A DNA stretch of 64,000 nt from Macrostomum lignano (taxonomy: Eukaryota). Both the position numbers and the translations under genes were made by a program. Location: assembly GCA_002269645.1 (NCBI GenBank), contig NIVC01003743.1, positions 1-64,000 on the forward strand, given 5' to 3'. Shown piece by piece: positions 28,386-64,000 of this stretch. Numbering within the stretch: the first letter of the stretch is position 1; every line of letters begins with the position of its first letter. The notes under the pieces are model-generated. The model did not search any database. It was not told the DNA's origin and worked only from the letters and a program-made list of their open reading frames with translations.

Positions 28386-28615
28386 ATGGCTTTCAGAATT
28401 TAATTGTGTTTAATTAAATCTCGCCGTTGAAATGTCAACTCTCAGTTGACATCAATCAATCACTCAAATTATGTTTATTGCTTGCTTTTCCTTCTGCATT
28501 CCGAATTTTCTCGAACACTGACCGTCTTTGCAGTTTATCGGAAGTTGTCTGGTTTTTGTTTCAAGATTTTATTAATTTAAAAAAAACAAAGCAAACTTCT
28601 CATCGCATAGTTGCT

Positions 28616-31247
28616 ATGGCAACCGCGTACACCTGCGAACACTTGAGCACTCAGCTGGGGCCCGGCAGTCCCGGCCGCGGCCAATATGAGATGCTATTAA
28701 AGCGACTCGTTTATCCTCGCAGTCCAGTCGAACGGGTGCTGAAATCCCAGAAGCAGAAATGCGCCCAATGCGACAGTATGGCCAGGGTTCACGCTTGCCT
28801 ACTCTGCGTTCACTTTGGTTGCTATGGCAACGGTCATATTCAAGGTCACGTGGACGCAGCGCATCCGGCCGGAGGATCTCAGGCTAGGCTAAGCGTGGAT
28901 TTGAGCTCTGGCCAGGTTTACTGCCACGATTGCTCGGATTATCGCTACGATCTTAGCCTGCTGCAGATGCTGCGTCAGTGCCGACGGCGGGCCTTCAAAT
29001 CGTTAGGCGTGCCGAACTTCTTCGAAGACTGGATACCCTCTGAGGAGTTCCTAGCCGTGCTGGCTAAGAATCGATTGAATCTGCGAGTGTCAACTAATCA
29101 ATTGCTGGGATTGCGCGGCCTGGTTAATCTGGGCAATACCTGCTTTATGAGCTGCATTGTTCAGGTTAGTAAATATTGCTTTTAAACTACTTAGTAAGTA
29201 GTAAAGAAACCAGTTGATTATTTTTGTCTGTTAGCATACTGTCTAGAAGGACTGTTCGTTCGTTCACAAAAGGTGATGTTAGAAGACTACAATAAAACTG
29301 ATCAGATACATCATACAAACAAATTCTGACAACATGAACAGTTCTGACACAACATGAAGAACAGTTCTGACACAACATAAACAGCTCTGACTCAACATGA
29401 AGAACAGTTCTGACACAACATAAACAGCTCTGACTCATGAACAGTTCTGACACAACATGAAGAACAGTTCTGACACAACATGAACAGCTCTGACTCATGA
29501 ACAGTCTTGACACAACATTAACAAGTTCTGACACATGAACAGTCCTGACACAACATTAACAAATTCTGACAAAACATAAAGAACAGTCTGACACTACATG
29601 TACATGAGGAACAGTTCTGACACAACATGAGGAACAGTTCTGACAAAACATGAGGAACAGTTCTGACACAAAATGAGGAACAGTTCTGACACTACATGAG
29701 GAACAGTTCTGACACAACATGAGGAACAGTTCTGACACAAAATGAGGAACAGTTCTGACAACATGAGGAACAGCTCTGACACACCTAATACCATGTGTCA
29801 GGTCACGAATACCTACAAACCGTCCCTATCAGGCACTGGTTCACACGCCCGTGCTGCGCGACTTCTTCCTGTTGGATCCGCACTCCAGCCTGCGCGAGCA
29901 CCCCGCCCTGTCCTGCCTCGTGTGCGAGTTTGCCCGACTATTTCGCGAATTCTATTCCGACTGCGATAATCCATTCGTGCCGAGCTCCACTCTGCACTTA
30001 ATCTGGGTGCACGCGCACCATCTAGCCGGCTACGAACAGCAGGACGCGCACGAATTTCTAATGGCCGCTTTAAATCTGCTGCACCAGCATTTCCAAGCCG
30101 ATTCTGGCAGCGGAGAGCCGAACGGTTGCACAGTTGGTCACCAGCTGCAGTTACAGCAGCAGAGAAGTCCATGCCGGTGCATTGTTGACCAAGTGTTCTC
30201 TGGTGAATTCCAGTCCGATCTCAAGTGTCTCGGCTGCGACAGCGTCTCGCGTACTATCGACCCGTTTTGGGATATTTCGTTGGATATGAACACCCTGACT
30301 AGCGAGAGTCAGACTCTTGGCTGCTCTCTGGAACGGTGGGTATTTTAGCTTTAGAGATGAACCTGGTGCTGGTAAAAACCGCGGTAATTTTCCGTTTAGA
30401 AAATGAGGTCTCGGATAATTCGTATGGGAATTTTGGGAGCTAAGATAATGAATTAATGGATTCTCTGGGGAATTTAGGCATTCTAAATGGAACTTGGGTG
30501 CATTCTAGGGAAATTGAGATATTCTAGGGGTAATTCAGGCGTTCTAGGGGGAATTTAATCATTCCAGGGGGAATTTAGGCATTCTGGGGAGGGAGTTTAG
30601 GCATACTAAATGGATTTTATACATTCAAAAGAAATTTATACATTCTAGGGATAATTCAGGGGGGATTTGGAGGATTTCGTTGGGGAATCAAAAGATTCTA
30701 CGGAGGAATCGAGGGATTTTAGTGGAGAATTCCGTAGGAAAGAATAATATATTTTTGGGTTTTGAAAAGAACTGCCCAGGTGTGCCGCATTGTTTGCAGG
30801 TACATCGCCCCCGAGCATCGAGGCAAGATTCGCTGCTTCCGCTGCCAGACAGTGCAAGACTCTATCAAACAGTTGACCTTTCGCAAGCTGCCAGTTGTGG
30901 CCTGTTTCCATTTCAAACGGTTCCAGCACGCCTGTCTGAACCACAGGAAGATTAGCACTCACATCTCGTTTCCCGAGCTGCTCGACATGACACCGTTCAT
31001 GTCTAGCAAGGCTAATCACGACGACTCGTTGGAGCGTCTTGGCAAACAGTACCGCCTGTTCTGCGTAGTGAATCACTCCGGTAGTCTGAGCGCCGGTCAC
31101 TACACCTGCTACGTGCGGCACAATTGTAACACCTGGTACAAATGCGACGATCACCAGATTAGCGATGTGCCAGTGTCTGAGGTGCTGACCTCCGAGGGCT
31201 ATCTGCTGTTCTATCACAAAGTTGTGCTAGATTATCATGTCACTTAA
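28616..31247 (+). CDS. USP22: Ubiquitin carboxyl-terminal hydrolase 22 / nonstop (SAGA DUB module), 3 exons
   Basis: Exons 28616-29164, 29833-30335 and 30800-31247 join in frame. N-terminal ZnF-UBP, Cys box GLVNLGNTCFMSCIVQ|ALVHTP, EQQDAHEF, KLPVVACFHFKRF, His box VVNHSGSLSAGHY..WYKCDD. Confidence 0.95.
29325..29775. repeat. ~23-bp minisatellite, USP22 intron 1
   Basis: Unit GAGGAACAGTTCTGACACAACAT with variants. Confidence 0.9.
30430..30740. repeat. Degenerate ~20-bp repeat, USP22 intron 2
   Basis: Recurrent ATTCTAGGGGGAATTTAGGC-like units. Confidence 0.6.
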
Positions 31248-32784: not shown

Positions 32785-34545
32785 CTGTCTGTGTTTGTCA
32801 GCTTGCCTACCTGCCTGTTTGTTTTAGTATCAATGTCTCTGTGTTTGTCAGCTTGCCTACCTGCCTGTTTGTTTTAGTATCAATGTGTCTGTGTTTGTCA
32901 GCTTGCCTACCTGCCTGTTTGTTTTAGTATCAATGTCTCTGTGTTTGTCAGCTTGCCTACCTGCCTGTTTGTTTTAGTATCAATGTCTCTGTGTTTGTCA
33001 GCTTGCCTACCTGCCTGTTTGTTTTAGTATCAATGTGTCTGTGTTTGTCAGCTTGCCTACCTGCCTGTTTGTTTTAGTATCAATGTCTCTGTGTTTGTCA
33101 GCTTGCCTACCTGCCTGTTTGTTTTAGTATCAATGTGTCTGTGTTTGTCAGCTTGCCTACCTGCCTGTTTGTTTTAGTATCAATGTCTGTCTGTGTTTGT
33201 CAGCTTGCCTACCTGCCTGTTTGTTTTAGTATCAATGTCTCTGTGTTTGTCAGCTTGCCTACCTGCCTGTTTGTTTTAGTATCAATGTGTCTGTGTTTGT
33301 CAGCTTGCCTACCTGCCTGTTTGTTTTAGTATCAATGTCTCTGTGTTTGTCAGCTTGCCTACCTGCCTGTTTGTTTTAGTATCAATGTCTCTGTGTTTGT
33401 CAGCTTGCCTACCTGCCTGTTTGTTTTAGTATCAATGTCTCTGTGTTTGTCAGCTTGCCTACCTGCCTGTTTGTTTTAGTATCAATGTGTCTGTGTTTGT
33501 CAGCTTGCCTACCTGCCTGTTTGTTTTAGTATCAATGTCTGTCTGTGTTTGTCAGCTTGCCTACCTGCCTGTTTGTTTTAGTATCAATGTCTCTGTGTTT
33601 GTCAGCTTGCCTACCTGCCTGTTTGTTTTAGTATCAATGTGTCTGTGTTTGTCAGCTTGCCTACCTGCCTGTTTGTTTTAGTATCAATGTCTCTGTGTTT
33701 GTCAGCTTGCCTACCTGCCTGTTTGTTTTAGTATCAATGTCTCTGTGTTTGTCAGCTTGCCTACCTGCCTGTTTGTTTTAGTATCAATGTCTCTGTGTTT
33801 GTCAGCTTGCCTACCTGCCTGTTTGTTTTAGTATCAATGTGTCTGTGTTTGTCAGCTTGCCTACCTGCCTGTTTGTTTTAGTATCAATGTCTCTGTGTTT
33901 GTCAGCTTGCCTACCTGCCTGTTTGTTTTAGTATCAATGTGTCTGTGTTTGTCAGCTTGCCTACCTGCCTGTTTTAGTATCAATGTCTCTGTGTTTGTCA
34001 GCTTGCCTACCTGCCTGTTTGTTTTAGTATCAATGTGTCTGTGTTTGTCAGCTTGCCTACCTGCCTGTTTGTTTTAGTATCAATGTCTCTGTGTTTGTCA
34101 GCTTGCCTACCTGCCTGTTTGTTTTAGTATCAATGTCTCTGTGTTTGTCAGCTTGCCTACCTGCCTGTTTGTTTTAGTATCAATGTCTGTCTGTGTTTGT
34201 CAGCTTGCCTACCTGCCTGTTTGTTTTAGTATCAATGTCTCTGTGTTTGTCAGCTTGCCTACCTGCCTGTTTGTTTTAGTATCAATGTCTCTGTGTTTGT
34301 CAGCTTGCCTACCTGCCTGTTTGTTTTAGTATCAATGTCTGTCTGTGTTTGTCAGCTTGCCTACCTGCCTGTTTGTTTTAGTATCAATGTCTGTCTGTGT
34401 TTGTCAGCTTGCCTACCTGCCTGTTTGTTTTAGTATCAATGTCTGTCTGTGTTTGTCAGCTTGCCTACCTGCCTGTTTGTTTTAGTATCAATGTCTGTCT
34501 GTGTTTGTCTGCTTGCCTACCTGCCTGTTTGTTTTAGTATCAATT
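32785..34545. repeat. 50-bp minisatellite between USP22 and DUS4L
   Basis: Unit CTGTGTTTGTCAGCTTGCCTACCTGCCTGTTTGTTTTAGTATCAATGT(C/G)T, about 35 copies, flanked by TGTC microsatellite. Confidence 0.95.
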
Positions 34546-35612: not shown

Positions 35613-35703
35613 GTAGTAATATCAGCTTCTAATTAGTCACTAAGACAAAATAGCATCCACAATGTTTGCCGCTTATCTTATCCTATTCCATCTTACAAAA
35701 TTC

Positions 35704-37657
35704 ATGTCGTCAAGCGAGCGCAGCAAGCTGTCAAAATTCTGCCAGCCCGGCAGGCCGTATGTCCGCATCTGCGCACCGATGGTTCGCTACTCCAAGCTTC
35801 CGTTTCGCTATCTGATGCGTCAGTACGGCTGCGACCTGTGCTACACGCCTATGATCGTCGCTTCGTCCTTTCTGTGCTCCGACAAGGCCAGGGACAACGA
35901 ATTCGTCACTGGGCCGGGCGACCGGCCTCTCATAGTGCAGTTCGCTTCTAACGATCCGGCAGAGTTCGCCGCCTGCGTCCAGTTGGTCGAGCCGCACTGC
36001 GACGGCGTGGATTTGAATTGCGGCTGTCCGCAACGCTGGGCCAATCAGCAGAATCTTGGCGTTTGTTTGTGCTCACAGCCGCAACTGTTAGCAGAGATGC
36101 TCACGGCTGCCAGGGCGGCGCTGCGATGTCCTAATAAGTTTGCGCTATCCGCAAAAATTCGATTGTGTCCGGATATGCGCGACACGGAGCGGCTGTGCTT
36201 GGTGAGCATGCCATACATGCGCAACCTTGGGGATCACTGGCCGTTTCTATTGGCAACACACATATGTAAGTCGCTATTGGCTGAGAGCAGTCACGTGACT
36301 ACTATTCTGTCCAATAGCGACTTACATGTGTGTGCTGTGTGTGTCGCCAATATAAACAGCCGGGTGAATCCCTAGATTGCGCCCAAGCATGTTGGTGAGG
36401 GGAGAGCAGTATAAAATTAGCCCAATGTACATTCTAAACCCAGAATGTAGATTGCCAGTTTGCTAAAAAATAGCCGCCCAAACCCAGAATGTAGATTGCC
36501 AGTTTGCTAAAAAATAGCCGCCCAAATCCAGAATGTACATTGACAGTGTGCTAAAAATAGACGCTTAAATCCAGAATGTACATTGCCAGTGTGCTAAAAA
36601 AATGCCCACATCCAGAATGTGCATTGCCAGTGTGTTAAAAATAGACGCCCAAATTTAGAATGTACATTGCCAGTGTGTTAAAAATAGACGCCCAAAATCT
36701 AGAATGTACATTGCCAGTGTGCTAAAAATAGATGCCTTAACCCAGAATGTACATTGCCAGTGACCCAAAAATAGACGCCTAAACCCAGAATGTAGATTGC
36801 ACAGTTTGCTAAAAATAGCCGCCCAAATCCAGAATGTACATTGCCAGTGTTCTAAAAATAGACGCTTAAACCCAGAATGTACATTGCCAGTGTTCTAAAA
36901 ACGCCTAAACCCAGAATGTAGATTGCCAGTTTGCTAAAAATAGCTGCCCAAATCCAGAATGTACATTGCCAGTGTTCTAAAAATAGACGCCTAAACCCAG
37001 AATTGATGATGTGCTAAAAATAGCCACCCAAATCCAGAATGTACATTGCCAGTGTGCTAGAAATAGATGCCTAAACCCAAAATTTACATTGCCAGTGTGC
37101 TAAAAATAGACGCCCAAATTCAGAATGTACATTGTCTGTGAGATAAGTAAAAATAGCTTTTGCCGCTCTTACCCACTCAGACCCTCGAAAAGGCCGGAGC
37201 AGATTGGATAACTGTGCACTGTCGCACTCCAACCCAGCGTCACGAGCCGGCAGACTGGGAAGCTTTAGCCCGACTACGCTCTGTTTTGCCGACCCGCATA
37301 GCTCTGGTTGCCAATGGCGACGTGTTTAATCTATTGGACGCGGACAGATTACATTCTCTTACTGGCTGTTTAGGCGTCATGTCCGCCAGAGGCCTAATAC
37401 GCAATCCGGCCATGTTCTCGCCAGAGAGGCCGTTGACAACGCCTAACGAGTGCGTTCGACGATTTTTATGGCTGAGCTTGAGTCTGGGCCTACCCTATCC
37501 GGTGTTTCACTATCACCTGGTGCACATGCTCGAGGATCGATTGAGTCGGGCTGAGGCGCATTTCTTCAATTATTTGACCAGCGTAGCCGCTGTTATTGAC
37601 TTTGTCAATCGGTGGGTTCTGAATGCTCATAATGGGGATTGTGGCAATGATGATTGA
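35704..37657 (+). CDS. DUS4L: tRNA-dihydrouridine(20a/20b) synthase, DUS4-like, 2 exons (upstream in-frame ATG at 35662 possible)
   Basis: Exons 35704-36201 and 37181-37657, phase 0. ICAPMVRYSKLPFR, DLCYTPM, PLIVQF, GVDLNCGCPQRWA, WITVHCRT, VANGDV, GVMSARGLIRNPAMF. Confidence 0.95.
36435..37135. repeat. ~43-bp minisatellite, DUS4L intron
   Basis: Unit CCAGAATGTACATTGCCAGTGTGCTAAAAATAGACGCCTAAAC, moderately diverged. Confidence 0.9.
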
Positions 37658-39634: not shown

Positions 39635-46182
<6,548 letters not shown>

Positions 46183-50494: not shown

Positions 50495-53400
50495 ATGACC
50501 AAGCTTGACGTCTTCGAATTCAAATTAGAGAATCCCGGCCGGCCTATTCTAACTGGCGGCGTTGTACGCGGCGAATTGCTGCTTCGATTAAAGAAAGACG
50601 TCGACATAGCCAGAATAATGGTGCACCTGTTTGGCGGCGGTCAAGTTGAATTCCAAGACGGCCAGGGCGCGACGGGTTCTAGGTCAACTACTGTGTGCGA
50701 AGATAACGAGACCTATATTCGATTGGCGCAGATTGTCTACGCCAAGGTTAGTAATGATTATTATAGTAATAATAATTAAATATCCTTAAGGAACAGGCAG
50801 TTCTTACTTCTTAGCTTCAATCAATTTTCTGGCTCTAATGCTGGTACAGGAGTGTAGTATTGACTAGAATGGTTTGTCTGGAATCTGGATATATCGTGTA
50901 GCTGAACTAAACCAATGCCCCATCTGCCTCTGGGTACTTTGTTTCATAGCGGCATAGCTTAGCTTATGTCGTGTCGCAACCAGCTTTCACTTTGGGATCC
51001 TGAGTGAATTTGAAGTTTGAACCCTTGTCGCTTGATGGCTAGTTGATGCCTATTTGGTACCCGTACCTGGTTCTTTCCCAGCTCGATGCCATTTAATTTA
51101 AGTTCCGCATTTTTGTAATTCTTATTTTATTTCTGTTACTCAATCCCGGCTTTAGTTTAGGGATCTCCTTAACTTCCCTAATCCCTTCAGGTATGATTGA
51201 AGGAAAGCTTAGGAAAGATTAGTTAAAGAGATGATTGAAGGATTAGTGAAGTTAAGGTATTATTGAAGGGATTAAGGAAATTAAGGTGATTGATGGATTA
51301 GGGAAGTTAAGTAGCTGCCTGAGGGGATTATGTAAGTTAAGTAGCTGCCTGAGGGGATTAGAGAAGTTAAATAGCTGCCTGAGGGGATTAGGGAAGTTAA
51401 GTAGCTGCCTGAGGGGATTAGGGAAGTTAAGTAGCTGCCTGAGGGGATTAGGGAAGTTAAGTAGCTGCCTGAGGGGATTAGGGAAGTTAAGTAGCTGCCT
51501 GAAGGGGATTAGGGAAGTTAAGTAGCTGCCTGAGGGGATTAAGGAAGTTAAGTAGCTGCCTGAGGGGATTAGGAAGTTAAGTAGCTGCCTGAGGGGATTA
51601 GGAAGTTAAGTAGCTGCCTGAGGGGATTAGGGAAGTTAATGAAATGCCTGAGGGGATTAGGGAAGTTAAGTAGCTGCCTGAGGGGATTAGGGAAGTTAAG
51701 TAGCTGCCTGAGGGGATTAGGGAAGTTAAGTAGCTGCCTGAGGGGATTAGGGAAGTTAAGTAGCTGCCTGAGGGGATTAAGGAAGTTAAGTAGCTGCCTG
51801 AGGGGATTAGGAAGTTAAGTAGCTGCCTGAGGGGATTAGGAAGTTAAGTAGCTGCCTGAGGGGATTAGGGAAGTTAAGTAGCTGCCTGAGGGGATTAGGG
51901 AAGTTAAGTAGCTGCCTGAGGGGATTAAGGAAGTTAAGTAGCTGCCTGAGGGGATTAGGGAAGTTAAGAAGATGTTTGAGGGGATTAGGGAAGTTAATGA
52001 AATGCCTGAGGGGATTAGGGAAGTTAAGTAGCTGCCTGAGGGGATTAAGGAAGTTAAGTAGCTGCCTGAGGGGATTAGGGAAGTTAAGTAGCTGCCTGAG
52101 GGGATTAGGGAATTTAAGTAGCTGCCTGAGGGGATTAGGGAAGTTAAGTAGCTGCCTGAGGGGATTAAGGAAGTTAAGTAGCTGCCTGAGGGGATTAGGG
52201 AAGTTAAGTAGCTGCCTGAGGGGATTAGGGAAGTTAAGTAGCTGCCTGAGGGGATTAAGGAAGTTAAGTAGCTGCCTGAGGGGATTAAGGAAGTTAAGTA
52301 GCTGCCTGAGGGGATTAGGGAAGTTAAGAAGATGTTTGAGGGGATTAGGGAAGTTAATGAAATGCCTGAGGGGATTAGGGAAGTTAAGTAGCTGCCTGAG
52401 GGGATTAAGGAAGTTAAGTAGCTGCCTGAGGGGATTAGGGAAGTTAAGTAGCTGCCTGAGGGGATTAGGGAAGTTAAGTAGCTGCCTGAGGGGATTAGGG
52501 AAGTTAAGTAGCTGCCTGAGGGGATTAAGGAAGTTAAGTAGCTGCCTGAGGGGATTAGGGAAGTTAAGTAGCTGCCTGAGGGGATTAGGGAAGTTAAGTA
52601 GCTGCCTGAGGGGATTAAGGAAGTTAAGTAGCTGCCTGAGGGGATTAGGGAAGTTAAGTAGCTGCCTGAGGGGATTAGGGAAGTTAAGTAGCTGCCTGAA
52701 GGGGATTAGGGAAGTTAAGTAGCTGCCTGAGGGGATTAAGGAAGTTAAGTAGCTGCCTGAGGGGATTAGGGAAGTTAAGTAGCTGCCTGAGGGGATTAGG
52801 GAAGTTAAGTAGCTGCCTGAGGGGATTAAGGAAGTTAAGTAGCTGCCTGAGGGGATTAGGGAAGTTAAGTAGCTGCCTGAGGGGATTAGGGAAGTTAAGT
52901 AGCTGCCTGAGAGGATTAGGGAAGTTAAGTAGCTGCCTGAGGGGATTAGGGAAGTTAAGTAGCTGCCTGAGAGGATTAGGGAAGTTAAGTAGCTGCCTGA
53001 GGGATTAGGGAAGTTAAGTAGCTGCCTGAGAGGATTAGGGAAGTTAAGTAGCTGCCTGAGGGGATTAAGGAAGTTAAGAAGATGTTTGAGGGGATTAGGG
53101 AAGTTAATGAAATGCCTGAAGGGATTAGGAATTCGTGAGGCAACCTACCTAACTGCCAACCCAAACCCAACCCGCCACCTGCAGTCGAACCCGTCAGCCA
53201 AAAAAATTTCTCGCAACGAACTCTACAAGTGCCCGTTCGAATTTCACCTGCCAGCTGATCTGCCCAGCTCGTTCATGACCGTGGTGTACTACAAGCTGAC
53301 CGCCTTCCTAGACTGCGGCGGAAAAAGTCACGAGGTCACCTTACCGCTGGTTGTTATTAACGATCTAGATCTTAATAAGTACTCTGGAAGGTTACACCTG

Positions 53401-55418
53401 GCCGAACCAATCGATGCCTGGTCGCCAAGTCGCTCCAAATTGGACACCGGCCTAGTAACCGCTCGATTAGTTGCCACTAAGAGAGGCTACGGTTTCGGGG
53501 AGACTATTGTCTTGCAAATCGAAATTTATAACAACTCCAAGGCTAAATTGGAGAATTTGAACGCCTGTCTGGTGCAGAAGGGCATTCTGAAAGTAAGTTT
53601 ACTCAAAAAAACATTTTTTGTAACATAATTTAACAAAATTGAGCATTCCCCAGAAGATTGTCTTGTCAGAAGATAGTCCTTGAAGAAGAAGATTGCCTGC
53701 CTGATAGTCCCTGAAGAAGATTGTCGTCCTGATGAAGAAGATTGCCTGATGGTCCCTAAAAAAAGAAGATTGTTTTCCTTATAGTCCTTAAAGAAAATTG
53801 TCTTCCCGATAGTCCCTAAAAAAAGAAGATTGGTTTCCTTATAGTCCTTAAAGAAAATTGTCTTCCCGATAGTCCCTTAAGAAGAAGATTGTCTGCCTGA
53901 TAGTCCCTGAAGAAGAAGATTGTCTGCCTGATAGTCCCTGAAGAAGAAGATTGTCTGCCTGATAGTCCCTGAAGAAGAAGATTGTCTGCCTGATAGTCCC
54001 TGAAGAAGAAGATTGTCTGCCTGATAGTCCCTGATGAATAAATTATGAATATTGTTTTCATTCCTAGTCAAGAGTATTAAAAAAAGACACGATTGTCTTC
54101 TAGTCTTTCCCTGGTCGCGCAGCTTCTATCATTGGATCCCTTTCGCTTCTTCCCCAGGCATACAGCAACAGCGGCGCCCAGTTCCGTCGAGTGCAGCGGC
54201 TGCTGGTGAAACACGTGAGCCTGGGCAAACTGCGCCAGGGTGAACGACTCACGCCTGAGGATATTCGAATCCAGGTGCCCTGGGTTGTCACCAGCGATAT
54301 GGACAAGTTTACTAAGCTGATCGAGATCGAATACTATGTTCAGGTGGGTAAACTTTTGGAATGGGGTATGGGGGAATTGCGGCACCCACTGAACCATGAG
54401 ATTGATGGGGAATTGCGGCACACACTGAACCATGAGATTGATGGGGAATTGCAGCTCCCAGTGAACCATGAGATTGATGGGGAATTGCGGCACCCACTGA
54501 ACCATGAGATTGATGGGGAATTGCGGCACACACTGAACCATGAGATTGATGGGGAATTGCGGCTCCCAGTGAACCATGAGATTGATGGGGAATTGCAGCT
54601 CCCACTGAACCATGAGATTGATGGGGAATTGCGGCACCCACTGAACCATGAGATTGATGGGGAATTGCGGCACCCACTGAACCATGAGATTGATGGGGAA
54701 TTGCAGCTCCCAGTGAACCATTAGATTGATGGGGAATTGCGGCACTCACTGAACCATGAGATTGAAGGGGAATTGTTGCTCCCAGTGAACCATGAGATTG
54801 ATGGGGAATTGCGGCACCCACCGAACCATGAGATTGATGGGGAATTGCGGCACTCACTGAACAATGAGATTGATGGTGAATTGCGGCACACACTGAACCA
54901 TGAGATTGATAGGGAATTGCGGCACATGAGATTGATAGGGAATTGCGGCACACGAGATTGATGGGGAATTGCGGCTCCCAGTAATTCTCACCTAAACGGG
55001 GAATCGCTCCGCCTCCCCCTCGCAGATCACCAGCAGCACGCAGATGCTGTCGGCAGTCACCGGCCAGCCGCTATCGCAGGTGGTTTGCATCGGACCAGAC
55101 TACCGGAAGTCCGAGTTAGTCAGCGTACTGTTAGAGGAACAAATCGCTATCGGAGTTCGAGCGCTCCGGGAGCCTAACGGAGTTGGCGCTGTCGGCTTGC
55201 AGACGCAACAGTCGCAGCAGACGAGCTCGTCTCTCTACCCAAGCTTGTCTACTACACCGTCGGCTCCACCGCCTGACAGCTCGGATTTGGCGATGTTCAC
55301 CATGGTGCCGACGGCGCCGCCTAGCTACGACGAGGCGCTGACGCATCAGAAAGCGCCGATTGAAGAGGCCGCCGGAGCTAGCAGCAGCGGGAACGGCGGT
55401 GATGTGGCTGAAGATTGA
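50495..55418 (+). CDS. ARRDC: Alpha-arrestin (arrestin domain-containing protein), 4 exons, ~412 aa
   Basis: Exons 50495-50746, 53185-53592, 54158-54343 and 55026-55418, all phase 0. Arrestin_N (VVRGELLLRLKK..IMVHLFGGG; PFEFHLPADLPSSF), Arrestin_C (KRGYGFGETIVLQIEIYNNS), C-terminal PPSY. Confidence 0.9.
51280..53130. repeat. 30-bp G-rich minisatellite, arrestin intron 1
   Basis: Unit GAGGGGATTAGGGAAGTTAAGTAGCTGCCT, about 60 copies. Confidence 0.95.
53650..54035. repeat. 31-bp minisatellite, arrestin intron 2
   Basis: Unit GAAGAAGAAGATTGTCTGCCTGATAGTCCCT. Confidence 0.9.
54365..54985. repeat. 36-bp minisatellite, arrestin intron 3
   Basis: Unit GAACCATGAGATTGATGGGGAATTGCGGCACCCACT with variants. 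Confidence 0.95.
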
Positions 55419-55499
55419 TTGCTTGATTAATTTTTTATTAAACTATTGATGCGTTAACTGAATTATCAGTTGATTAACTGATGTGTTGATTGACTTATA

Positions 55500-56940
55500 T
55501 GTTGATTAATTTATCAGTTGATTGATTGATGAGTTGATTGATTGATGAGTTGATTGATTGATGAGTTGATTGATTGATGAGTTGATTGATTGATGAGTTG
55601 ATTGATTGGTGAGTTTATTGATTGATGAGTTTATTGATTGATGAGTTGATTGATTGATGAGTTGATTGATTGATGAGTTGATTGATTGATGAGTTGATTG
55701 ATTGATGAGTTGATTGATTGATGAGTTGATTGATTGATCAGTTGATTGATTGATGAGTTGATTGATTGATGAGTTGATTGATTGATGAGTTGATTGATTG
55801 ATCAGTTGATTGATTGATGAGTTGATTGATTGATGAGTTGATTGATTGATCAGTTGATTGATTGATCAGTTGATTGATTGATCAGTTGATTGATTGATCA
55901 GTTGATTGATTGATGAGTTGATTGATTGATCAGTTGATTGATTGATCAGTTGATTGATTGATCAGTTGATTGATTGATGAGTTGATTGATTGATCAGTTG
56001 ATTGATTGATCAGTTGATTGATTGATCAGTTGATTGATTGATCAGTTGATTGATTGATGAGTTAATTGATTGATCAGTTGATTGATCGATCAGTTGATTG
56101 ATTGATCAGTTGATTGATTGATGAGTTGATTGATTGATCAGTTGATTGATTGATCAGTTGATTGATTGATCAGTTGATTGATTGATCAGTTGATTGATTG
56201 ATCAGTTGATTGATTGATGAGTTGATTGATTGATCAGTTGATTGATTGATCAGTTGATTGATTGATGAGTTGATTGATTGATCAGTTGATTGATTGATCA
56301 GTTGATTGATTGATGAGTTGATTGATTGATGAGTTGATTGATTGATCAGTTGATTGATTGATCAGTTGATTGATTGATCAGTTGATTGATTGATCAGTTG
56401 ATTGATTGATCAGTTGATTGATTGATGAGTTGATTGATTGATGAGTTGATTGATTGATCAGTTGATTGATTGATTGAGTTGATTTGAATGATTGATTGAT
56501 GAGTTGATTGATTGATGAGTTGATTGATTGATGAGTTTATCGTTGATTGATCAGTTGATTAATTAATCAGCTGATTGATTGATGAGTTGATGATTGATCA
56601 GTTGATTGATTGATCAGTTGATTGATTGATGAGTTGATTGATTGATCAGTTGATTGATTGATCAGTTGATTGATTGATGAGTTGATTGATTGATCAGTTG
56701 ATTGATTGATGAGTTGATTGATTAATGAGTTGACTGATTGATCAGTTAATTGATCGATCAGTTGATTGATTGATGTGTTGATTGATTGAGGGTTTGATTG
56801 ATTGATGAGTTGACTGATTGATGTGTTGATTGATCGATCAGTTGATTGATTGATTGATGTGTTGATTGATTGATGTGTTGATTGATTTTTGAGTTGATTG
56901 ATTGATGTGTTGATTGATGGATATGCTGATTGATTGATTT
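55500..56940. repeat. 16-bp GTTGATTGATTGAT(G/C)A array downstream of arrestin
   Basis: Direct reading. Confidence 0.95.
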
Positions 56941-58410: not shown

Positions 58411-59913
58411 TGTCAGTGAGCTTTAGGCAAGGTGGTGTCATATATCTGCAGTGTACTACGGGTTTCAATGCTTGTAATGAATTAAATGTTAAATTGAACT
58501 GCAGTTCATGAATATTTTATTCGCTTTCAATGCTAAACTGACATACGCGATGCCCGCTACGCATACGTAAGTAGTATATACTGCAAGTGCTTGGTTTTTT
58601 CATTTCGGTTTTTTTAACGCGTTCGTTAAACTTGGGTTTCTAATTGTCCATTATTTAACTATGAATATGAATTATGATTGCACCTTCGAATTTGCAATTT
58701 GGATTTTTATTATTTTTGCGTAATTACACACACGTACGAATGCGGCTTGAAAGCGATGCTATTTTGTACTACTATAACTATTACTATAGTACTGGTGTAC
58801 TTTTGGAAGAGTTCAAATAAAAAGCTTCACCTTGCTGAGCGCAATCTTATTTAGCTATTTAATATGCATGTAAATTTGTAGCTTCAAATTATAAGTACAT
58901 CGATAAGTTTTCATTACATCGTGTGCGCGTATTCCTTTTTCATGAATTTGGAAGTTCAGTCATAGAGTTTAATCTTACAGTTCAAAGGCTTTGGTTTAGC
59001 AGTATAATTAACCGTAAGCTGCATGTATGCTACTTGAATGGGTCGTCTTGTACGAGCGTATCAACTTGTCTGCAAGTTCTAATTGCTAATTGCTCTTAGG
59101 CAAAGTTATTTAATTTTATTAATGCGAGTAAAAGACGTTCAATTTTTGCTTTTATACATGGCCTCTATATAAACGGATGTCTTCTATTTTCTTACTAGAC
59201 TTCGTACGATTACAAAATTAATGGTATATTTACCGCCAGAGTGGCAAAGGCCAGCCTTTTGGAACATGAAAATAATGTGCCGAAGCGAGAGTGCAATACG
59301 AAATATTTAGTTAGTTGTATATGGATGGGACGCATTTATTTCAAAGAAAAAAACAATTCGTGTTTAGCAAATTGCCGCGAGAACCTTTAGGTTAAGTCCC
59401 AGCAATTGCTTGGAGAAAAAATGCAGCAAACGATTATCGAGTGTTTTGAGTACAGTTTTGGGCAGATGAATATATACCGTTAGAAATAAGCGCGGCTCCG
59501 GACAGTGGTAATGTTACATGCAAATATACACAAGACCGTCTTTCTGTGCGAATGCGTCGCGAAATAAAAATTTTTTGCTGCTACCGGAAGGTCAAATAAG
59601 TTGCCTGCCGAGGATTATTACCTGCGAGTTGGGCTAAGAATTTACTCGTCGATATTAAACAATTGGGGTAATGCACGAGCAAGGTCGGGGCTCAATGAAC
59701 ATTGTTTAGGCTTTCATACAAGCAATGCCATTGGGGTGGGCAAATATCGGAGACGCGGATGGGAAGTCAAACTGGGCGGTTATAGAAAGTTTGCAGTCAG
59801 AGAGCGGCGAGCTGGTCAACCATTACGCATGCAATACTTCTATTTAAGTCTGCAGTCACCGGGTGTTTGAGAGTCGGCTTTCGAGTTGACCGGGGGGAGA
59901 GTGCCGCAGTTGC

Positions 59914-60324
59914 TTAGCAGCCTGGGTACATTGATTGCATCTGGGCGCACTGGCGTTGTCGCGACTGGCACATCATGGCGATCATCTGGTCGTCCTTGCG
60001 GTCCATCAGCTCCGCGCAGCGCTGCTTCCAGCACCTGGCCTGTTCGCGCCAGCGGCAAGCCTCGATCTTCCATTGCCTGGTGGACTCTCGACAGCGCATC
60101 GCCTCCGCCCGCCATTTGGCCAGCGCGTCGCGGGTTTTGCAGTATTCGCACTTCATTATGTTGGCCTGCTGGCGCCAATGGAAAGCTGTGCGAGTCATTT
60201 CGCAGAGCTGCTTCTGCAGTTTGACGGCCTCGGCGCGCCACTTTTCCCGGCTCCGCTTCCATCGGTGGATGCAGTCCTTCCAATTCGCGTCGCACCAATT
60301 GGGCGCGCAGCCATTGATGTTCAT
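59914..60324 (-). CDS. Orphan 136-aa Trp/Cys-rich heptad-repeat (coiled-coil) protein
   Basis: ATG...TAA ORF in a GC-rich island. Trp at residues 15, 22, 29, 50, 71, 85, 92 and 99, all in one 7-residue register. KWRAEA repeated 42 aa apart. The DNA itself is not repetitive. Confidence 0.75.
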   Translation of the reverse strand: MNINGCAPNWCDANWKDCIHRWKRSREKWRAEAVKLQKQLCEMTRTAFHWRQQANIMKCEYCKTRDALAKWRAEAMRCRESTRQWKIEACRWREQARCWKQRCAELMDRKDDQMIAMMCQSRQRQCAQMQSMYPGC

Positions 60325-60894
60325 TACTTCTTTGACGAACTCGCAGTCAAACTCGCATTAACGGTCGCTAAAAGCTGTTTAGCAGATCTTTTTTGCTCCC
60401 CTGGAATGAGCGAGCTGTTGCCGATCGATGGGTTGGGTAAAAGTCGTTGCTGCGCTGCGAGCGGGGCCGCTTTAGCCCGCTCCCTAGACTGAGCCTCGGG
60501 TTTCAGCCATAGACATGTTTTTAGCGTGCAGTCCTGGCTTACTGGTTGGGGCGAAGATCGAAGCCGAATACGCTATGGGTGTCAGTCCCGATCGTCTCAG
60601 ATAGCAAGCTTTAAAGCAACTCTAAGAATTTGGCAGCGAACGGCTGTCTGGTAACTTTCGTTTGTACTTTTATCAAAATACTCTGATGGGGCGGGACATC
60701 ACCACTGCGTTTATGTTAGCTGACAGACTGTCTGATGTGACTCAGACTTTTTATTGATATTTGAGGCCGGATTAATTCATGTACAGTGCGTTTTGGATTT
60801 ATAATAATTTCTGCCTATAAATCTCGTTATTAATTCTAGGAAATATATATAAATATTCTTTCTACACGTCTGTCTCTGAATTCTATAGACTGTG

Positions 60895-61480
60895 ATGGTC
60901 TGTGATTGACTGTGATGGACTGTGACGATGGACTGTGATGGACTGTGATAGACTGTGACGACGGACTGTGATAGACTGTGATGGATTGTGATGGACTGTG
61001 ATGGATTGTGATAGACTGTGATGGATTGTGATAGACTGTGGTAGACTGTGATAGACTGTGATGGACTGTGATGGACTGTGATGGACTTTGATGGACTGTG
61101 ATGGACTGTGATAGACTGTGATGGACTGTGGTAGACTGTGACGGACTGTGATGGACTGTGTTGGACTGTGATAGACTGTGATGGACTGTGATGGACTGTG
61201 ATGGACTGCGGTAGATTGTGACGGACTGTGATGGACTGTATTAATAGTCTGTGACGAACTGGTGATGGACTGGAGATGGACTGTGATGGACTGTGATAGA
61301 CTGTGATGGACTGTGGTAGACTGTGACGGACTGTGATGGACTGTGTTGGACTGTGATAGACTGTGATGGACTGTGATGGACTGTGATGGACTGCGGTAGA
61401 TTGTGACGGACTGTGATGGACTGTGATATACTGTGATGCACTGTGACGAACTGGTGATGGACTGATGGTGGATTGTGATG
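60895..61480. repeat. 10-bp minisatellite (CTGTGATGGA)n
   Basis: Direct reading. Confidence 0.95.
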
Positions 61481-64000
61481 GAGAGTGCGGCTTGCTGCCG
61501 TACACAGGCTAACGATCGCATGCACGAATTGACACCCCTTGGAAGCGCAGCGCGTGGATTGACCTGCATGGTGTGCTCGCGGCTGGTTCACGGTTTTGTC
61601 CAGCCGGTAGCCAAATGGATGATCTGATAGCAGCGGCAGCCTATTATAGAGTCGGTACATGCGCATCCACCGCAAAATTATTTAATATACGCAGAGGTAC
61701 ATGTACTGCATCTGCATGCATGAACTGATGCGCCACGCCTACTGACTGAGTTAAATACATTACTACGCATGCTTCTCGGCCCCTGGGCAGATCGAGTGTT
61801 TTTGGCCTGGTGCAGGTATTAAAAGGTACCGAGCAGACTGTGCCTGCAAGACACACCTGCACGACGCACAATGAGTGCTCTACCGTTCCGATTGAATTTT
61901 GTCAACTTCGCCTCAGCTAGTAGCTATAAATGTACATGTACCATAAATACGACCGTATAGCTTTAGATTGTGTTTGACAGGCCTGCAATCCTATGGATAA
62001 TTCTCGATTTCCTACACATGGTGTTCCTTTCGAACACATGCATTAAATGTCGTAAACAGTTAAAATGCAACAACTCTATGATAGACCTACATGTACATGT
62101 ACGCGAGAGCAAATAAAGGGGCCTTTTGAGCCAAGCAATTATTTGCGCCATGAAATTGAATTCAGTAGCACTACAGTTTTTGGCCTCCTTCAGTGCGACA
62201 AGCTGCACGTATGTGGCCTACTGTTCGATCATTGTTGGCCATATACATGTACATTGTAGCTAACGACACATACATGCACATGTATTACACATAGTCGTAA
62301 ATGTACATGCGTGTATATTCTATATACTCCGATTCACTCCGCTCTGTTGCTAGCTATTGAGTTATAGGCATAAACGTATGTACAACCATACCTCTATTAA
62401 CATTTATGTATATTACTACACACGCAATTGTCCATATGCAACTGCAGACAACGTACATACATAGCTGTATGTTTTAGAGCTGAAATCGATCATAAAAAGA
62501 TAATTTTAATTTTCTCGTAATAAACTTTCTGATCGATCGAAATTTATTCACACTGCAACAACATGTGGCTTTCATGATAAATGTATTGTTCAAGGACCAC
62601 TGCAAAGTTACCGATTGTACAAGTACAGCCGCGTAAAATGTTTCGTCAGACAGCTAGTATAGTGATGAGTTTCAATTGAACAAAGCGCAGACAAGAGTTG
62701 CAGTTAATTTTGATATTGAGGTTCAAACGGCATTTTATAATATTTTTTTAATTCTAGCCTTCGCCGGTCGTGGACACAGCTGCATGACATGAGATCGGCA
62801 ATGCAATGCGATATTTTGAGCTGGAGTTGGATTGAGCATCAGAGTATGTAATTTTTTATCTGCATTATTTTTATGTTGCATTATTTTTGCGTTTTCTGAA
62901 TTTTAAGTAAATGATTTCATGGGCTCCACGAAGCATTTTCAATTAAACATGCAATAAGAGATACAGTACTTTGTTATACGACTAACTCTGTTTCTTGTAA
63001 AAAAGCTCGAGCTCACATTGCAGATTGATGTTGATTCGATCGATAAAATGTAACTTAATCGATAAAGTTGTCGACAACAACACGAACATGTATAACTGTA
63101 TTTAATTTAACAATGCTAATGTTATCCGCTTTGTTGTTTACTCGCGTTTTTAGACCTACTTGTTAGCCTTATAAATCGTAGGGCTACGTTGCAGTTTGTT
63201 TTGCGACTCTAGATTTATTTGTTTGGGCGTAGGCCTAGACTTTATCGAGGATTTGAGCCTAAGCCTAACTTTTTCTGCATGTTAATAAGCCTTAGTAGGG
63301 CTTTCCATATGCCTAATATGGAAAATGCTATTTACACAGAAGTTTCTAGAATGAAATTTTTATATTAATACAGTACAGAAAGTTAGCAAAGGTCAATACA
63401 AGGTCACTACAAAGTACAATGACTAATTCAGTAATAGGAATTTTGGTAACAGCCACTTTGACTTTGGTAACAAGTGAGAATAACAGCTGTATTAATTAAT
63501 AGGCTCAAAAAATCTCAAGAAAGTTTCATAGAAAGAATAATAAAAAATAATTAAGATTAATCTATTATATGTATTATATCATATATAATATATAGCCTAG
63601 GCCCTATATTATAATTTTGATTTCTGGCAATCTAGGTAGGCCTATGCCAACTGCACTTTAGTAGTACTTTTGCTAAATTCTCTTTGTTTTCAAATTTTCC
63701 CCAAGGAAAGTTAATGTGTGAGTATAAACAAAGGCCTTCTTGAACTTTAGGTACATAAAATACTTCCAATTTTCCATTTTTTTGAAAATTTTGTTAGAGT
63801 CCTAAAGGCTGTCCAAAATGATAATAAAGAAAAAAAACTGCAAAAAATTACCCTCAAAGGTAACAGGAGGTTGATTTGTACATCTCTTATATAACTAATG
63901 TTAATTTGATCCAAGCAGTTTCGGAGAATTGTGTGTTTGAAAGTTGAACTTATTTTAGAATCATAACTTTCTAATGTAAATATTTTCTAAAATTTGATGA

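What the first reader, a model, noticed from the sequence alone, without database searches (positions are those of the whole stretch)
59914..60324. Orphan protein with tryptophan locked to a heptad register: candidate natural Trp-zipper coiled coil
Seen: positions 15, 22, ..., 106 read W W W L M W M T W C W W W L. Every in-register W is followed by K or R. The +4 position is mostly small or hydrophobic (I R A L A A Y L A T A A C). There are 13 Cys and no signal peptide, and the DNA is not a tandem repeat, so the pattern is held at protein level. Known: Trp is rare in coiled-coil cores, and engineered Trp zippers form higher oligomers with a channel. Inference: a lineage-specific structural or filament protein, possibly disulfide cross-linked. 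In-frame CEFDCEFVKEV just upstream hints at a slightly longer N-terminus if there is an indel.
Basis: partly seen in the sequence, partly recalled or inferred. Interest (0 to 1): 0.75.

Follow-up and report, generated by a model that had tools for sequence, protein, structure and literature searches.

The report
Testis flatworm protein with tryptophan heptads
A real, selectively constrained gene of the flatworm Macrostomum lignano, from a testis-expressed family found only in that genus, encodes a single long helix with an invariant tryptophan every seventh residue, a core pattern not seen in any solved coiled coil and with no known function.

Summary
The 136-aa ORF at 59914..60324 (-) has 8 of its 9 Trp in one heptad position. 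Each is followed by K/R, and Ala or a small residue sits four positions on. The DNA is not repetitive.

The window is Macrostomum lignano (contig NIVC01003743.1). The ORF is a called gene. It has four further paralogue groups in this genome and no relative outside Macrostomum among about 15 billion proteins.

All eight in-register Trp are invariant across the five paralogues although dS is saturated. dN/dS is 0.14-0.44. Heptad positions d, e and a are the most conserved, and b and f the least. AlphaFold2 gives one helix spanning residues 9-132.

A published comparative study lists the family as orthogroup OG0001725_2. It is annotated "Testis region" and falls in the high-expression bin. Orthologues occur in 8-13 Macrostomum species, with omega 0.065-0.26.

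The gene is therefore not a true orphan and not a transposon ORF. It is also not a classic Trp zipper, because Trp occupies only d. Only 2 of the 13 Cys are conserved, and the proposed N-terminal extension is not supported.

The best reading is a testis/sperm coiled-coil rod with a Trp/Ala seam. Oligomer state, strand orientation and function remain untested.

The parts
59914..60324 (-). Complete CDS (136 codons plus TAA stop at 59914..59916) of a Macrostomum-specific, testis-family helical protein. The coding part is a single exon.
   Evidence: ORF list and translation. The exact protein is a called gene on three contigs of GCA_002269645.1, and locus L007 is this window. CDS GC is 0.60 and GC3 0.81, against 0.41-0.46 in the flanks.
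59986..60291 (-). Heptad rod, residues 12-113. It holds 14 uninterrupted heptads: d = Trp at 8 positions (15, 22, 29, 50, 71, 85, 92, 99) with L/M/T/C at the other six, a = Ala or small, e = Lys/Arg, g = Glu/Gln/Ser.
   Evidence: Register table. All eight Trp are invariant in the five paralogues; mean pairwise identity by position is d 0.79, e 0.76, a 0.61, b 0.35, f 0.40. Hydrophobic periodicity is 3.5 residues on the Wimley-White interfacial scale. AlphaFold2 gives one helix over residues 9-132, with 10-residue block means of pLDDT of 92-98 over residues 21-100.
60292..60324 (-). N-terminal cap, residues 1-11 (MNINGCAPNWC). It holds the only out-of-register Trp (W10). In the paralogues it is followed by a variable, Gln-rich insert.
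   Evidence: Alignments. pLDDT is below 50 for residues 1-10.
59917..59985 (-). C-terminal tail, residues 114-136 (Gln/Met/Cys-rich). It is weakly conserved and ends in Cys in two of the paralogues.
   Evidence: Five-paralogue alignment. 10-residue block means of pLDDT fall from 82 to 61 over residues 111-136.
60358..60360 (-). In-frame TAA stop just upstream of the CEFDCEFVKEV peptide. It closes the reading frame 12 codons before the ATG.
   Evidence: Sequence read and extended translation. Upstream regions of the paralogues do not align.

Best explanation
This is a functional single-coding-exon gene of the flatworm Macrostomum lignano. It belongs to a small family restricted to the genus: five paralogue groups in this genome, listed in the literature as orthogroup OG0001725_2. 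Members of that family are annotated as highly expressed in the testis region.

The 16.6-kDa product is essentially one alpha-helix about 120 residues long. Along about 100 residues (about 14-15 nm) it carries a strict 7.0-residue seam: Trp at d, Ala or a small residue at a, Lys/Arg at e, and Glu/Gln at g.

The most likely mechanism is that the Trp/Ala seam is the buried interface of a supercoiled helix-helix assembly. This would be a coiled coil made of copies of the protein or of its paralogues, forming a rigid rod that acts as a structural or scaffolding element in spermatogenic cells or sperm. The large Trp knobs would be accommodated by the small Ala residues of the partner helix.

Shown: the gene is real and under purifying selection; the Trp register is invariant; the conservation pattern has coiled-coil form; a helix is predicted; the family carries a testis-region annotation.

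Inferred: self-association, strand orientation, oligomer number and the structural role.
For: Gene reality:
- The exact protein is a called gene on three contigs of the M. lignano assembly.
- GenBank gene models of that assembly derive only from RNA-seq transcripts (RPKM >= 0.5, or supported by a mapping of the earlier de novo transcriptome assembly) and exclude repeat-overlapping transcripts (PMC5730564).

Selection:
- Pairwise dN/dS between the five paralogue groups is 0.14-0.44 with dS above 1.
- Nucleotide similarity between paralogues is confined to the CDS.
- Published codeml omega values for the orthologue sets are 0.065, 0.104, 0.167, 0.208 and 0.264. The 0.065 set has 408 sites (136 codons), the length of this protein (PMC8662610 Table S1).

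Expression:
- The four orthologue sets listed in the Datasets sheet are in the '[50 - max]' expression bin, and all five sets are annotated 'Testis region'. That annotation scheme was largely validated by in situ hybridisation.

Structure:
- AlphaFold2 gives a single helix over residues 9-132, mean pLDDT 86.
- The eight d-position Trp are invariant, and d, e and a are the most conserved positions while b and f are the least. This is the conservation signature of a coiled coil.
- Periodicity is 3.5 rather than 3.6 residues over about 100 residues. From helix geometry, the stripe therefore winds around a straight helix and can only stay on one interface if the helix supercoils.
- A Trp+Ala layer has 316 cubic angstroms of side-chain volume, close to 333 for Leu+Leu.
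Against: - No oligomer could be modelled or measured. The AlphaFold2 model is a monomer built from a two-sequence alignment, and long lone helices are its default output for such sequences.
- Trp is very rare at coiled-coil core positions (general knowledge). No solved structure shows a Trp(d)/Ala(a) repeat, so the packing has no precedent.
- Simple counts disagree on orientation. Sterics favour antiparallel packing: the layer-volume SD is 36-53 cubic angstroms, against about 107 for a parallel in-register dimer. Charges favour parallel packing: 2-3 attractive g-e' pairs, against 5-8 like-charge e-e' pairs in the shared antiparallel register.
- The testis annotation is documented for paralogues by gene ID. 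The link of this particular copy to Mlig013763.g1 rests on length only.
- The structural role is a guess from abundance, constraint and shape.
Confidence: 0.55

Rival explanations
1. The Trp plus Lys/Arg stripe is not a homotypic core. It is a binding face for another polymer or surface. The helix would wrap in a supercoil along a filament or nucleic acid, as tropomyosin does on actin, or dock onto an acidic membrane. Indoles would stack or insert, and the neighbouring basic residues would contact phosphates or acidic groups.
For: - The invariant Trp is always followed by a conserved basic residue; identity at position e is 0.76.
- Trp with Arg/Lys is a typical interfacial or nucleotide-stacking combination (general knowledge).
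- The Trp form two triplets, 15/22/29 and 85/92/99, plus isolated sites, which could be discrete contact platforms.
- The 10.5-angstrom spacing of residues i and i+7 is a regular ruler (helix geometry).
- A parallel homodimer would pack poorly.
Against: - The non-Trp d positions are conserved hydrophobics (L36 and L106 invariant, M43 in 3 of 5) and the a positions are conserved small or hydrophobic residues. That looks like a continuous buried seam rather than spaced contacts.
- Net charge ranges from 0 to +15 among the paralogues, so polyanion binding is not a conserved property.
- No partner is known.
Confidence: 0.2
2. The protein is a natural Trp zipper forming a parallel higher-order bundle (pentamer-like) with a central channel, possibly locked by disulfides.
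For: - Trp sits in a strict heptad register.
- Engineered peptides with Trp at the core positions are known to form pentamers. This comes from memory of Liu et al. 2004; the term is used for a pentameric coiled-coil building block in PMC4619341.
- In a parallel arrangement the g-e' pairs are attractive or neutral.
- C103 at an a position is invariant.
Against: - Trp occupies only d. Position a is mostly Ala, Thr or Cys, so the defining all-Trp core is absent.
- In parallel bundles the layers would alternate between very bulky and nearly empty: 456 against 177 cubic angstroms per pair.
- Eleven of the 13 Cys are not conserved.
- The protein has no signal peptide, so it starts in a reducing compartment.
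Confidence: 0.08
3. It is a sperm nuclear basic protein, protamine-like, that condenses chromatin in spermatids.
For: - The family is testis-region expressed.
- This paralogue is basic (pI 9.5, net +14) and Cys-rich, as many protamines are (general knowledge).
Against: - K+R is only 21% of residues.
- Paralogue D is neutral (net 0, pI 7.15) and E is only +6.
- The protein is predicted to be an ordered helix.
- The conserved features are Trp and the heptad seam, not charge density.
Confidence: 0.05
4. It is not a functional gene. It would be a chance ORF in a GC-rich, stop-poor island, or an ORF of a mobile or repeated element.
For: - The island is stop-poor in several frames. A longer 185-aa ORF runs antisense at 59935..60492.
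- The window is packed with satellite arrays.
- A hAT transposase-like gene lies about 4.5 kb away in one allelic copy.
Against: - dN/dS is well below 1 with saturated dS in this frame.
- Antisense and other-frame ORFs are not kept across the paralogues.
- The paralogues sit in unrelated genomic contexts with unrelated flanks.
- The family is analysed as expressed orthologues in 8-13 species.
Confidence: 0.02

Closest known systems
Macrostomum orthogroup OG0001725_2 (Table S1 of PMC8662610, Mol Biol Evol 2021)
   Same: Paralogues B (Mlig029657) and D (Mlig033729) of this gene are listed there by gene ID. They are 60% and 55% identical to the window protein. One orthologue set has exactly 136 codons. 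All sets are annotated testis-region, with omega 0.065-0.26.
   Different: That study treats the group only as one of 1,149 alignments for rate analyses. It says nothing about the protein, its Trp register or its function. The identity of the window copy with Mlig013763.g1 is inferred from length and was not shown.
Engineered tryptophan-zipper pentamer (Lpp-56-derived peptide with Trp at all a and d positions; Liu et al. 2004, recalled from memory)
   Same: Trp sits in a strict heptad register on a long helix.
   Different: Here Trp is at d only, position a is Ala or small, and 6 of the 14 d positions are L, M, T or C. The oligomer state is unknown. This protein is natural, conserved and testis-expressed.
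Alacoil and sterically matched (large/small) antiparallel coiled coils (Gernert et al. 1995; Monera et al. 1996; recalled from memory)
   Same: A small residue recurs every seven positions at one core position and is paired with a large residue at the other. Antiparallel pairing gives even layer volumes, with an SD of 36-53 cubic angstroms, and the same register is optimal in four of the five paralogues.
   Different: The large partner is Trp rather than Leu or Ile. The e positions are nearly all basic, which would put 5-8 like charges opposite each other in an antiparallel homodimer. Orientation was not tested.
Canonical leucine-zipper-type parallel coiled coils
   Same: The heptads are unbroken, with basic e and acidic or polar g positions giving attractive g-e' pairs. 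Core and flanking positions are more conserved than b, c and f.
   Different: Core chemistry differs: Trp/Ala instead of Leu with Ile or Val. A parallel in-register dimer would alternate Trp-Trp and Ala-Ala layers.

Membership tests
Heptad-repeat (left-handed) coiled-coil proteins | Uninterrupted 7-residue (3.5-residue) periodicity of apolar residues over several heptads | tested here: met
   There are 14 consecutive heptads without a stutter. Apolar residues occupy d at 13 of 14 and a at 11 of 15 positions. The spectral peak is at 3.5 residues on the Wimley-White interfacial scale.
Heptad-repeat (left-handed) coiled-coil proteins | Continuous alpha-helix | tested here: met
   AlphaFold2 gives a helix over residues 9-132, with 10-residue block means of pLDDT of 92-98 over residues 21-100. 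This is a prediction only.
Heptad-repeat (left-handed) coiled-coil proteins | Core (a, d) and flanking (e, g) positions more conserved than the outer b, c and f positions | tested here: met
   Mean pairwise identity is d 0.79, e 0.76, a 0.61, g 0.58, c 0.58, f 0.40 and b 0.35.
Heptad-repeat (left-handed) coiled-coil proteins | Typical aliphatic core (Leu, Ile, Val at a and d) | tested here: not met
   Position d is Trp in 8 of 14 heptads, and a is Ala, Thr or Cys in 8 of 15.
Heptad-repeat (left-handed) coiled-coil proteins | Two or more helices packed knobs-into-holes | not testable with these tools
   Only single-chain prediction was available. This needs multimer prediction or experiment.
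Engineered Trp-zipper pentamer | Trp at both a and d core positions | tested here: not met
   Trp is at d only. The a positions read D I R A L A A Y L A T A A C K.
Engineered Trp-zipper pentamer | Parallel five-helix bundle | not testable with these tools
   No oligomer modelling or biophysics was available.
Alacoil-type / sterically matched antiparallel coiled coil | Small residue every seventh position in the core, matched with a large one | tested here: met
   Position a is mostly Ala, Thr, Ser or Cys in all paralogues, and d is Trp. d/a' layers have a volume SD of 36-53 cubic angstroms, against about 107 for parallel packing.
Alacoil-type / sterically matched antiparallel coiled coil | Compatible e-e' and g-g' contacts in antiparallel orientation | tested here: not met
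   There are 5-8 like-charge e-e' pairs and 0-3 like-charge g-g' pairs in the shared best-packed register. This is a crude count.
Sperm nuclear basic proteins / protamine-like | Very high and conserved Arg/Lys content | tested here: not met
   K+R is 21% of residues. Net charge is 0, +6, +9, +14 and +15 among the paralogues.
Transposable-element or repeat-borne ORF | Copies share flanking element sequence and lie in repeats | tested here: not met
   Between paralogue groups only part of the CDS aligns at DNA level. Flanks do not align. Neighbouring genes differ. There is no tandem repeat in the ORF.
Any curated protein family (Pfam) or solved structure | Significant profile match | tested here: not met
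   The best Pfam hit is a generic coiled-coil model at E = 0.04, below its cut-off. The best PDB profile search hit is E = 0.8. An exhaustive HMMER search of 1.84 billion representatives finds only M. lignano paralogues plus one low-complexity coiled-coil hit at E = 3e-4.
Macrostomum orthogroup OG0001725_2 (testis region) | Homology to the listed member genes | tested here: met
   The window protein is 60% identical to BOX15_Mlig029657g2 and 55% identical to BOX15_Mlig033729g1. Both gene IDs are listed in the orthogroup.

The most novel reading that the evidence does not exclude
The family is a natural coiled coil of a kind not yet seen. Its core would alternate invariant Trp (d) with Ala or small residues (a), a 'Trp/Ala zipper'. 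Steric matching would dictate an unusual assembly, either antiparallel or staggered, possibly built from mixed paralogues. That assembly would form a rigid sperm-specific rod or filament in Macrostomum.
Probability: 0.4. Interest if true: 0.7.

Novelty: new variant of a known kind. Interest (0 to 1): 0.6.

Why it matters
Coiled coils are the best-understood protein fold. Their sequence-to-structure rules are built almost entirely on aliphatic cores, and Trp cores are known only from engineered peptides. A natural family that has kept eight Trp at one heptad position, with omega as low as 0.065 in a class of genes that usually evolves fast, would be a test case for those rules. It bears on how a 228-cubic-angstrom side chain is packed, which orientation and oligomer number result, and what the adjacent basic residues do. 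It could also supply a new self-reporting (fluorescent) assembly module.

For flatworm biology, the family is an abundant, genus-restricted, testis-expressed set of proteins with no assigned role. M. lignano offers RNAi, in situ hybridisation and transgenesis, so its role in the elaborate Macrostomum sperm is directly testable.

Tried and rejected
- Within-group comparison. I compared the three near-identical copies of this gene (L005-L007). The CDS differs by 1-2 synonymous changes. The flanks are almost as similar once satellite indels are set aside, so this comparison has no power.
- In-window paralogues. tblastn and blastn found none.
- Internal duplication of the protein. Identity at shifts of 7 to 49 residues does not exceed a null that preserves heptad position. 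The best value is p = 0.036 at shift 42, uncorrected for seven tests.
- Antisense or other-frame coding. The 185-aa antisense ORF is not kept in the paralogues.
- N-terminal extension. A stop lies directly upstream, and the upstream DNA is not conserved between paralogues.
- Shared promoter or UTR motifs among paralogues. There is no 10-mer shared by three or more paralogues within 500 nt upstream, and the flanks do not align.
- Expression look-ups by gene ID. Nothing was found in the main text of any paper. Nothing was found in the held supplements of PMC5816591, PMC7336406 or PMC5730564; some of those files may be truncated. Only PMC8662610 gave hits.
- Mlig-sperm1 as a candidate identity. 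It is a different gene, Mlig020950, which is conserved in planarians and has a beta-sheet domain.
- PDB search with an idealised (EAARWKQ)x8 peptide. It returned only designed Leu/Ile coiled coils, none with Trp in register.
- Literature searches for natural Trp-heptad coiled coils and for Macrostomum sperm coiled-coil proteins. Nothing relevant was found.
- Structure-library (Foldseek) search. I did not run it, because a single long helix gives meaningless matches.

Full report
**1. The observation**

Window 59914..60324 on the minus strand is an ATG-to-TAA ORF of 136 codons. Trp occurs at residues 10, 15, 22, 29, 50, 71, 85, 92 and 99, so eight of the nine Trp fall in one residue class modulo 7. 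The full series 15+7k reads W W W L M W M T W C W W W L.

Each in-register Trp is followed by Lys or Arg. The +4 position reads I R A L A A Y L A T A A C, and there are 13 Cys.

None of 200,000 random placements of nine Trp reached eight in one class. The analytic probability is about 1e-5 (my calculation).

The DNA is not repetitive. Tandem Repeats Finder at its lowest threshold reports nothing in 59800..60450. The 21-nt heptad units average 37% identity, and the Lys/Arg codons differ from one heptad to the next.

**2. Where the window comes from and whether this is a gene**

The exact protein is a called gene on three contigs of the Macrostomum lignano assembly GCA_002269645.1. One of them, NIVC01003743.1 (locus L007), is this window in reverse orientation.

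The GenBank annotation of that assembly was built only from RNA-seq-derived transcripts (novel ones needed RPKM >= 0.5 or a mapping of the earlier de novo transcriptome) passed through TransDecoder. Transcripts overlapping repeats were removed (PMC5730564). A gene model there implies a transcript. This applies directly to the paralogues whose GenBank names I could see. For the window copy the names are masked by the tool, so it is inferred.

The CDS is a compositional island: GC 0.60 and GC3 0.81, in flanks of 0.41-0.46. The window as a whole is mostly minisatellite arrays with scattered exons of ordinary host genes (zf-UBP, dihydrouridine synthase, arrestin).

**3. Relatives**

A word-indexed search of 5.8 billion protein clusters and an exhaustive HMMER search of 1.84 billion representatives found only M. 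lignano proteins. They fall into five groups:

| Group | Protein | GenBank name | Length | Copies or loci | State of the ORF |
|---|---|---|---|---|---|
| A | P0001 (window protein) | masked | 136 aa | 3 contigs (L005-L007) | intact |
| B | P0002 | BOX15_Mlig029657g2 | 143 aa | 4 contigs (L001-L004) | intact |
| C | P0003 | Mlig005078g1 | 118 aa | L008 | in-frame TAG at L008 3355 |
| D | P0006 | Mlig033729g1 | 156 aa | L009 | intact |
| E | P0004 | Mlig033173g2 | 70 aa | L010 | 1-nt frameshift near L010 3198 |

- Group B is 60% identical to the window protein.
- In C, homologous coding sequence continues beyond the in-frame TAG.
- In E, restoring one base recovers the whole protein and keeps the Trp register. 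These two lesions may be real or may be assembly errors.
- The one remaining hit is a 1,240-aa low-complexity coiled-coil protein at E = 3e-4 and is not a relative.
- Pfam gives only a sub-threshold generic coiled-coil match. PDB sequence profiles give nothing.

Between the groups, DNA similarity is confined to part of the CDS. Upstream and downstream regions do not align and share no 10-mers, and the neighbouring genes differ. The family is therefore a set of dispersed cellular paralogues, not a mobile element.

**4. Selection and what is conserved**

Nei-Gojobori dN/dS between the five groups is 0.14-0.44, with dS between 1.1 and more than 3, which is saturated.

In the five-way alignment all eight in-register Trp are invariant. 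W10 is kept in four of the five paralogues.

Mean pairwise identity by heptad position, calling the Trp position d, is as follows:

| Position | d | e | a | g | c | f | b |
|---|---|---|---|---|---|---|---|
| Identity | 0.79 | 0.76 | 0.61 | 0.58 | 0.58 | 0.40 | 0.35 |

This is the pattern expected if d and a are buried, e and g flank the interface, and b and f face solvent.

The non-Trp d positions are also hydrophobic and largely conserved (L36 and L106 invariant, M43 in 3 of 5).

Only two Cys are invariant: C18 at g and C103 at a. The Cys at 41, 59, 62, 78, 90 and 98 in this paralogue are replaced in the others.

Net charge runs from 0 (D) to +15 (C), and this copy is +14 with pI 9.5. Strong basicity is therefore not a family property, although the basic e position is.

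The three copies of group A differ by only 1-2 synonymous changes. Their flanks are about as similar, so that comparison says nothing.

**5. Published information**

Table S1 of PMC8662610 (Mol Biol Evol 2021) lists orthogroup OG0001725_2 split into these orthologue sets:

| Set | M. lignano gene | Species | Sites (nt) | omega |
|---|---|---|---|---|
| MIortho3 | Mlig013763.g1 | 13 | 408 | 0.065 |
| MIortho4 | Mlig029657.g1 | 12 | 435 | 0.167 |
| MIortho6 | not retrieved | not retrieved | 432 | 0.208 |
| MIortho8 | Mlig014861.g2 | 10 | 426 | 0.104 |
| MIortho10 | Mlig033729.g1 | 8 | 432 | 0.264 |

All are annotated "Testis region", and the four sets listed in the Datasets sheet are in the upper expression bin.

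Five sets match the five paralogue groups I found. The 408-site set equals 136 codons, the length of the window protein. It has the highest whole-worm expression value of the four listed (-5.9) and the lowest omega. I infer, but could not show, that this set is the window gene.

The "Testis region" label comes from positional RNA-seq of cut worms (Arbore et al. 2015). According to the paper it was largely validated by in situ hybridisation. The orthologue sets include species with absent or reduced sperm bristles, so the family is not tied to bristles. The paper does not discuss the protein itself.

**6. Structure**

AlphaFold2, run on a single chain with a two-sequence alignment, gives one helix over residues 9-132. 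Mean pLDDT is 86, with 10-residue block means of 92-98 over residues 21-100.

On the Wimley-White interfacial hydrophobicity scale the strongest period over residues 12-112 is 3.5 residues. From helix geometry, a straight alpha-helix has 3.6 residues per turn. A stripe with a 7.0-residue repeat drifts about 20 degrees per heptad, roughly 260 degrees over 13 heptads. It can stay on one interface only if the helix supercoils around a partner. This is the main argument that the Trp seam is a coiled-coil-type interface and not a flat amphipathic face.

**7. How the seam could pack (simple counts, not a model)**

- In a parallel in-register dimer the layers would alternate Trp+Trp (456 cubic angstroms) and Ala+Ala (177 cubic angstroms). 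The layer-volume SD is about 107 in every paralogue.
- In an antiparallel pair each layer is d+a'. A Trp+Ala layer is 316 cubic angstroms, close to 333 for Leu+Leu. The SD falls to 36-53, and the same register is optimal in four paralogues and a near-tie in the fifth.
- Charges point the other way. A parallel dimer has 2-3 attractive g-e' pairs and no repulsive ones. The shared best-packed antiparallel register puts 5-8 Lys/Arg pairs opposite each other at e-e'.

Orientation and oligomer number are therefore open. Heteromers of paralogues, antiparallel four-helix arrangements, or a non-self partner all remain possible.

The engineered Trp-zipper pentamer is not a good model, because it has Trp at both core positions (from memory; the term appears in PMC4619341). 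No PDB chain aligns its own Trp with those of an idealised Trp(d)/Ala(a) heptad peptide.

**8. Interpretation**

- Best supported (0.55): a testis/sperm coiled-coil rod of about 14-15 nm whose Trp/Ala seam is the assembly interface, serving a structural or scaffolding role. The points for it are a constraint that is strong for a testis gene, high expression, five co-retained paralogues with the same register, and the conservation pattern.
- Binding-face reading (0.2): the stripe binds a filament, nucleic acid or membrane.
- Parallel Trp-zipper bundle with disulfides (0.08).
- Protamine-like chromatin protein (0.05).
- Non-gene or transposon ORF (0.02).

**9.

- "Orphan" needs qualifying. The gene has no relative outside the genus, but it belongs to a five-paralogue family with orthologues in 8-13 congeners.
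- Disulfide cross-linking is at most a feature of this paralogue.
- The CEFDCEFVKEV peptide is closed by a TAA at 60358..60360. It stems from a 12-nt imperfect duplication that is absent from the paralogues. Paralogues B, C and D start at the same aligned Met as this copy, while E carries three extra N-terminal residues.

**10. Verdict**

This is a real feature: an uncharacterised, genus-restricted, testis-annotated helical protein family with an invariant Trp heptad. The kind (heptad coiled coil) is known. The core chemistry and its conservation are not. I rate it a new variant of a known kind, with interest 0.6.

Noticed in passing
window 59935..60492 (+): A 185-aa ORF runs antisense to the gene and is longer than the gene itself. 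Several frames of this GC-rich island are stop-poor. The antisense ORF is not kept in the paralogues, so it is a compositional artefact that could mislead ORF-length-based calling.
   Followed up: yes
L008 3355..3357 and L010 about 3198: Paralogue C (Mlig005078g1) has an in-frame TAG with homologous coding sequence continuing after it. Paralogue E (Mlig033173g2) has a 1-nt frameshift, and repairing it restores the full protein and the Trp register. These are either young pseudogenes or indel or base errors of the long-read assembly.
   Followed up: partly
window 60334..60357 (-): An imperfect 12-nt direct duplication (TGCGAGTTTGAC / TGCGAGTTCGTC) lies just upstream of the ATG. It is preceded by TAA and is absent from the paralogues.
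   Followed up: yes
window 60777..61675 (-), array at 60888..61482: A 10-bp minisatellite (GACTGTGATG, about 58 copies) 0.5 kb upstream of the gene creates long spurious ORFs of the HHSPSQSITV type in several frames.
   Followed up: partly
whole window, e.g. 6276..8733, 26473..28386, 32788..34544, 40507..42110, 51295..53129, 55445..56938: Minisatellite arrays are unusually dense: 35 Tandem Repeats Finder rows with score 200 or more, periods of 8-134 bp, and arrays up to 2.4 kb. Unique genic islands sit between them. No Rfam family matches in the window.
   Followed up: no
window 28427..29185 (+), 35662..36375 (+), 53086..53628 (+): These look like exons of ordinary host genes: a zf-UBP zinc finger, a dihydrouridine synthase (Dus) and an arrestin. 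A 412-aa arrestin gene model (Arrestin_N and Arrestin_C) is called about 4.5 kb downstream of the gene in loci L006 and L007.
   Followed up: partly
L005 1..510: In one of the three near-identical copies of the locus, a hAT-family transposase-like gene (ZBED1 and Dimer_Tnp_hAT domains, 549 aa) is called about 4.5 kb upstream. It is not called in L006 or L007. The corresponding position in this window lies beyond its end.
   Followed up: no
residues 12-92 of the protein (window 60049..60291) and the aligned residues of L001, L008, L009, L010: The antiparallel d/a' register with the most even layer volumes is the same one in four of the five paralogues and a near-tie in the fifth. Its dyad lies near residue 52, with W50 opposite A54'. 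This could be a real constraint or a by-product of the shared Trp pattern.
   Followed up: partly
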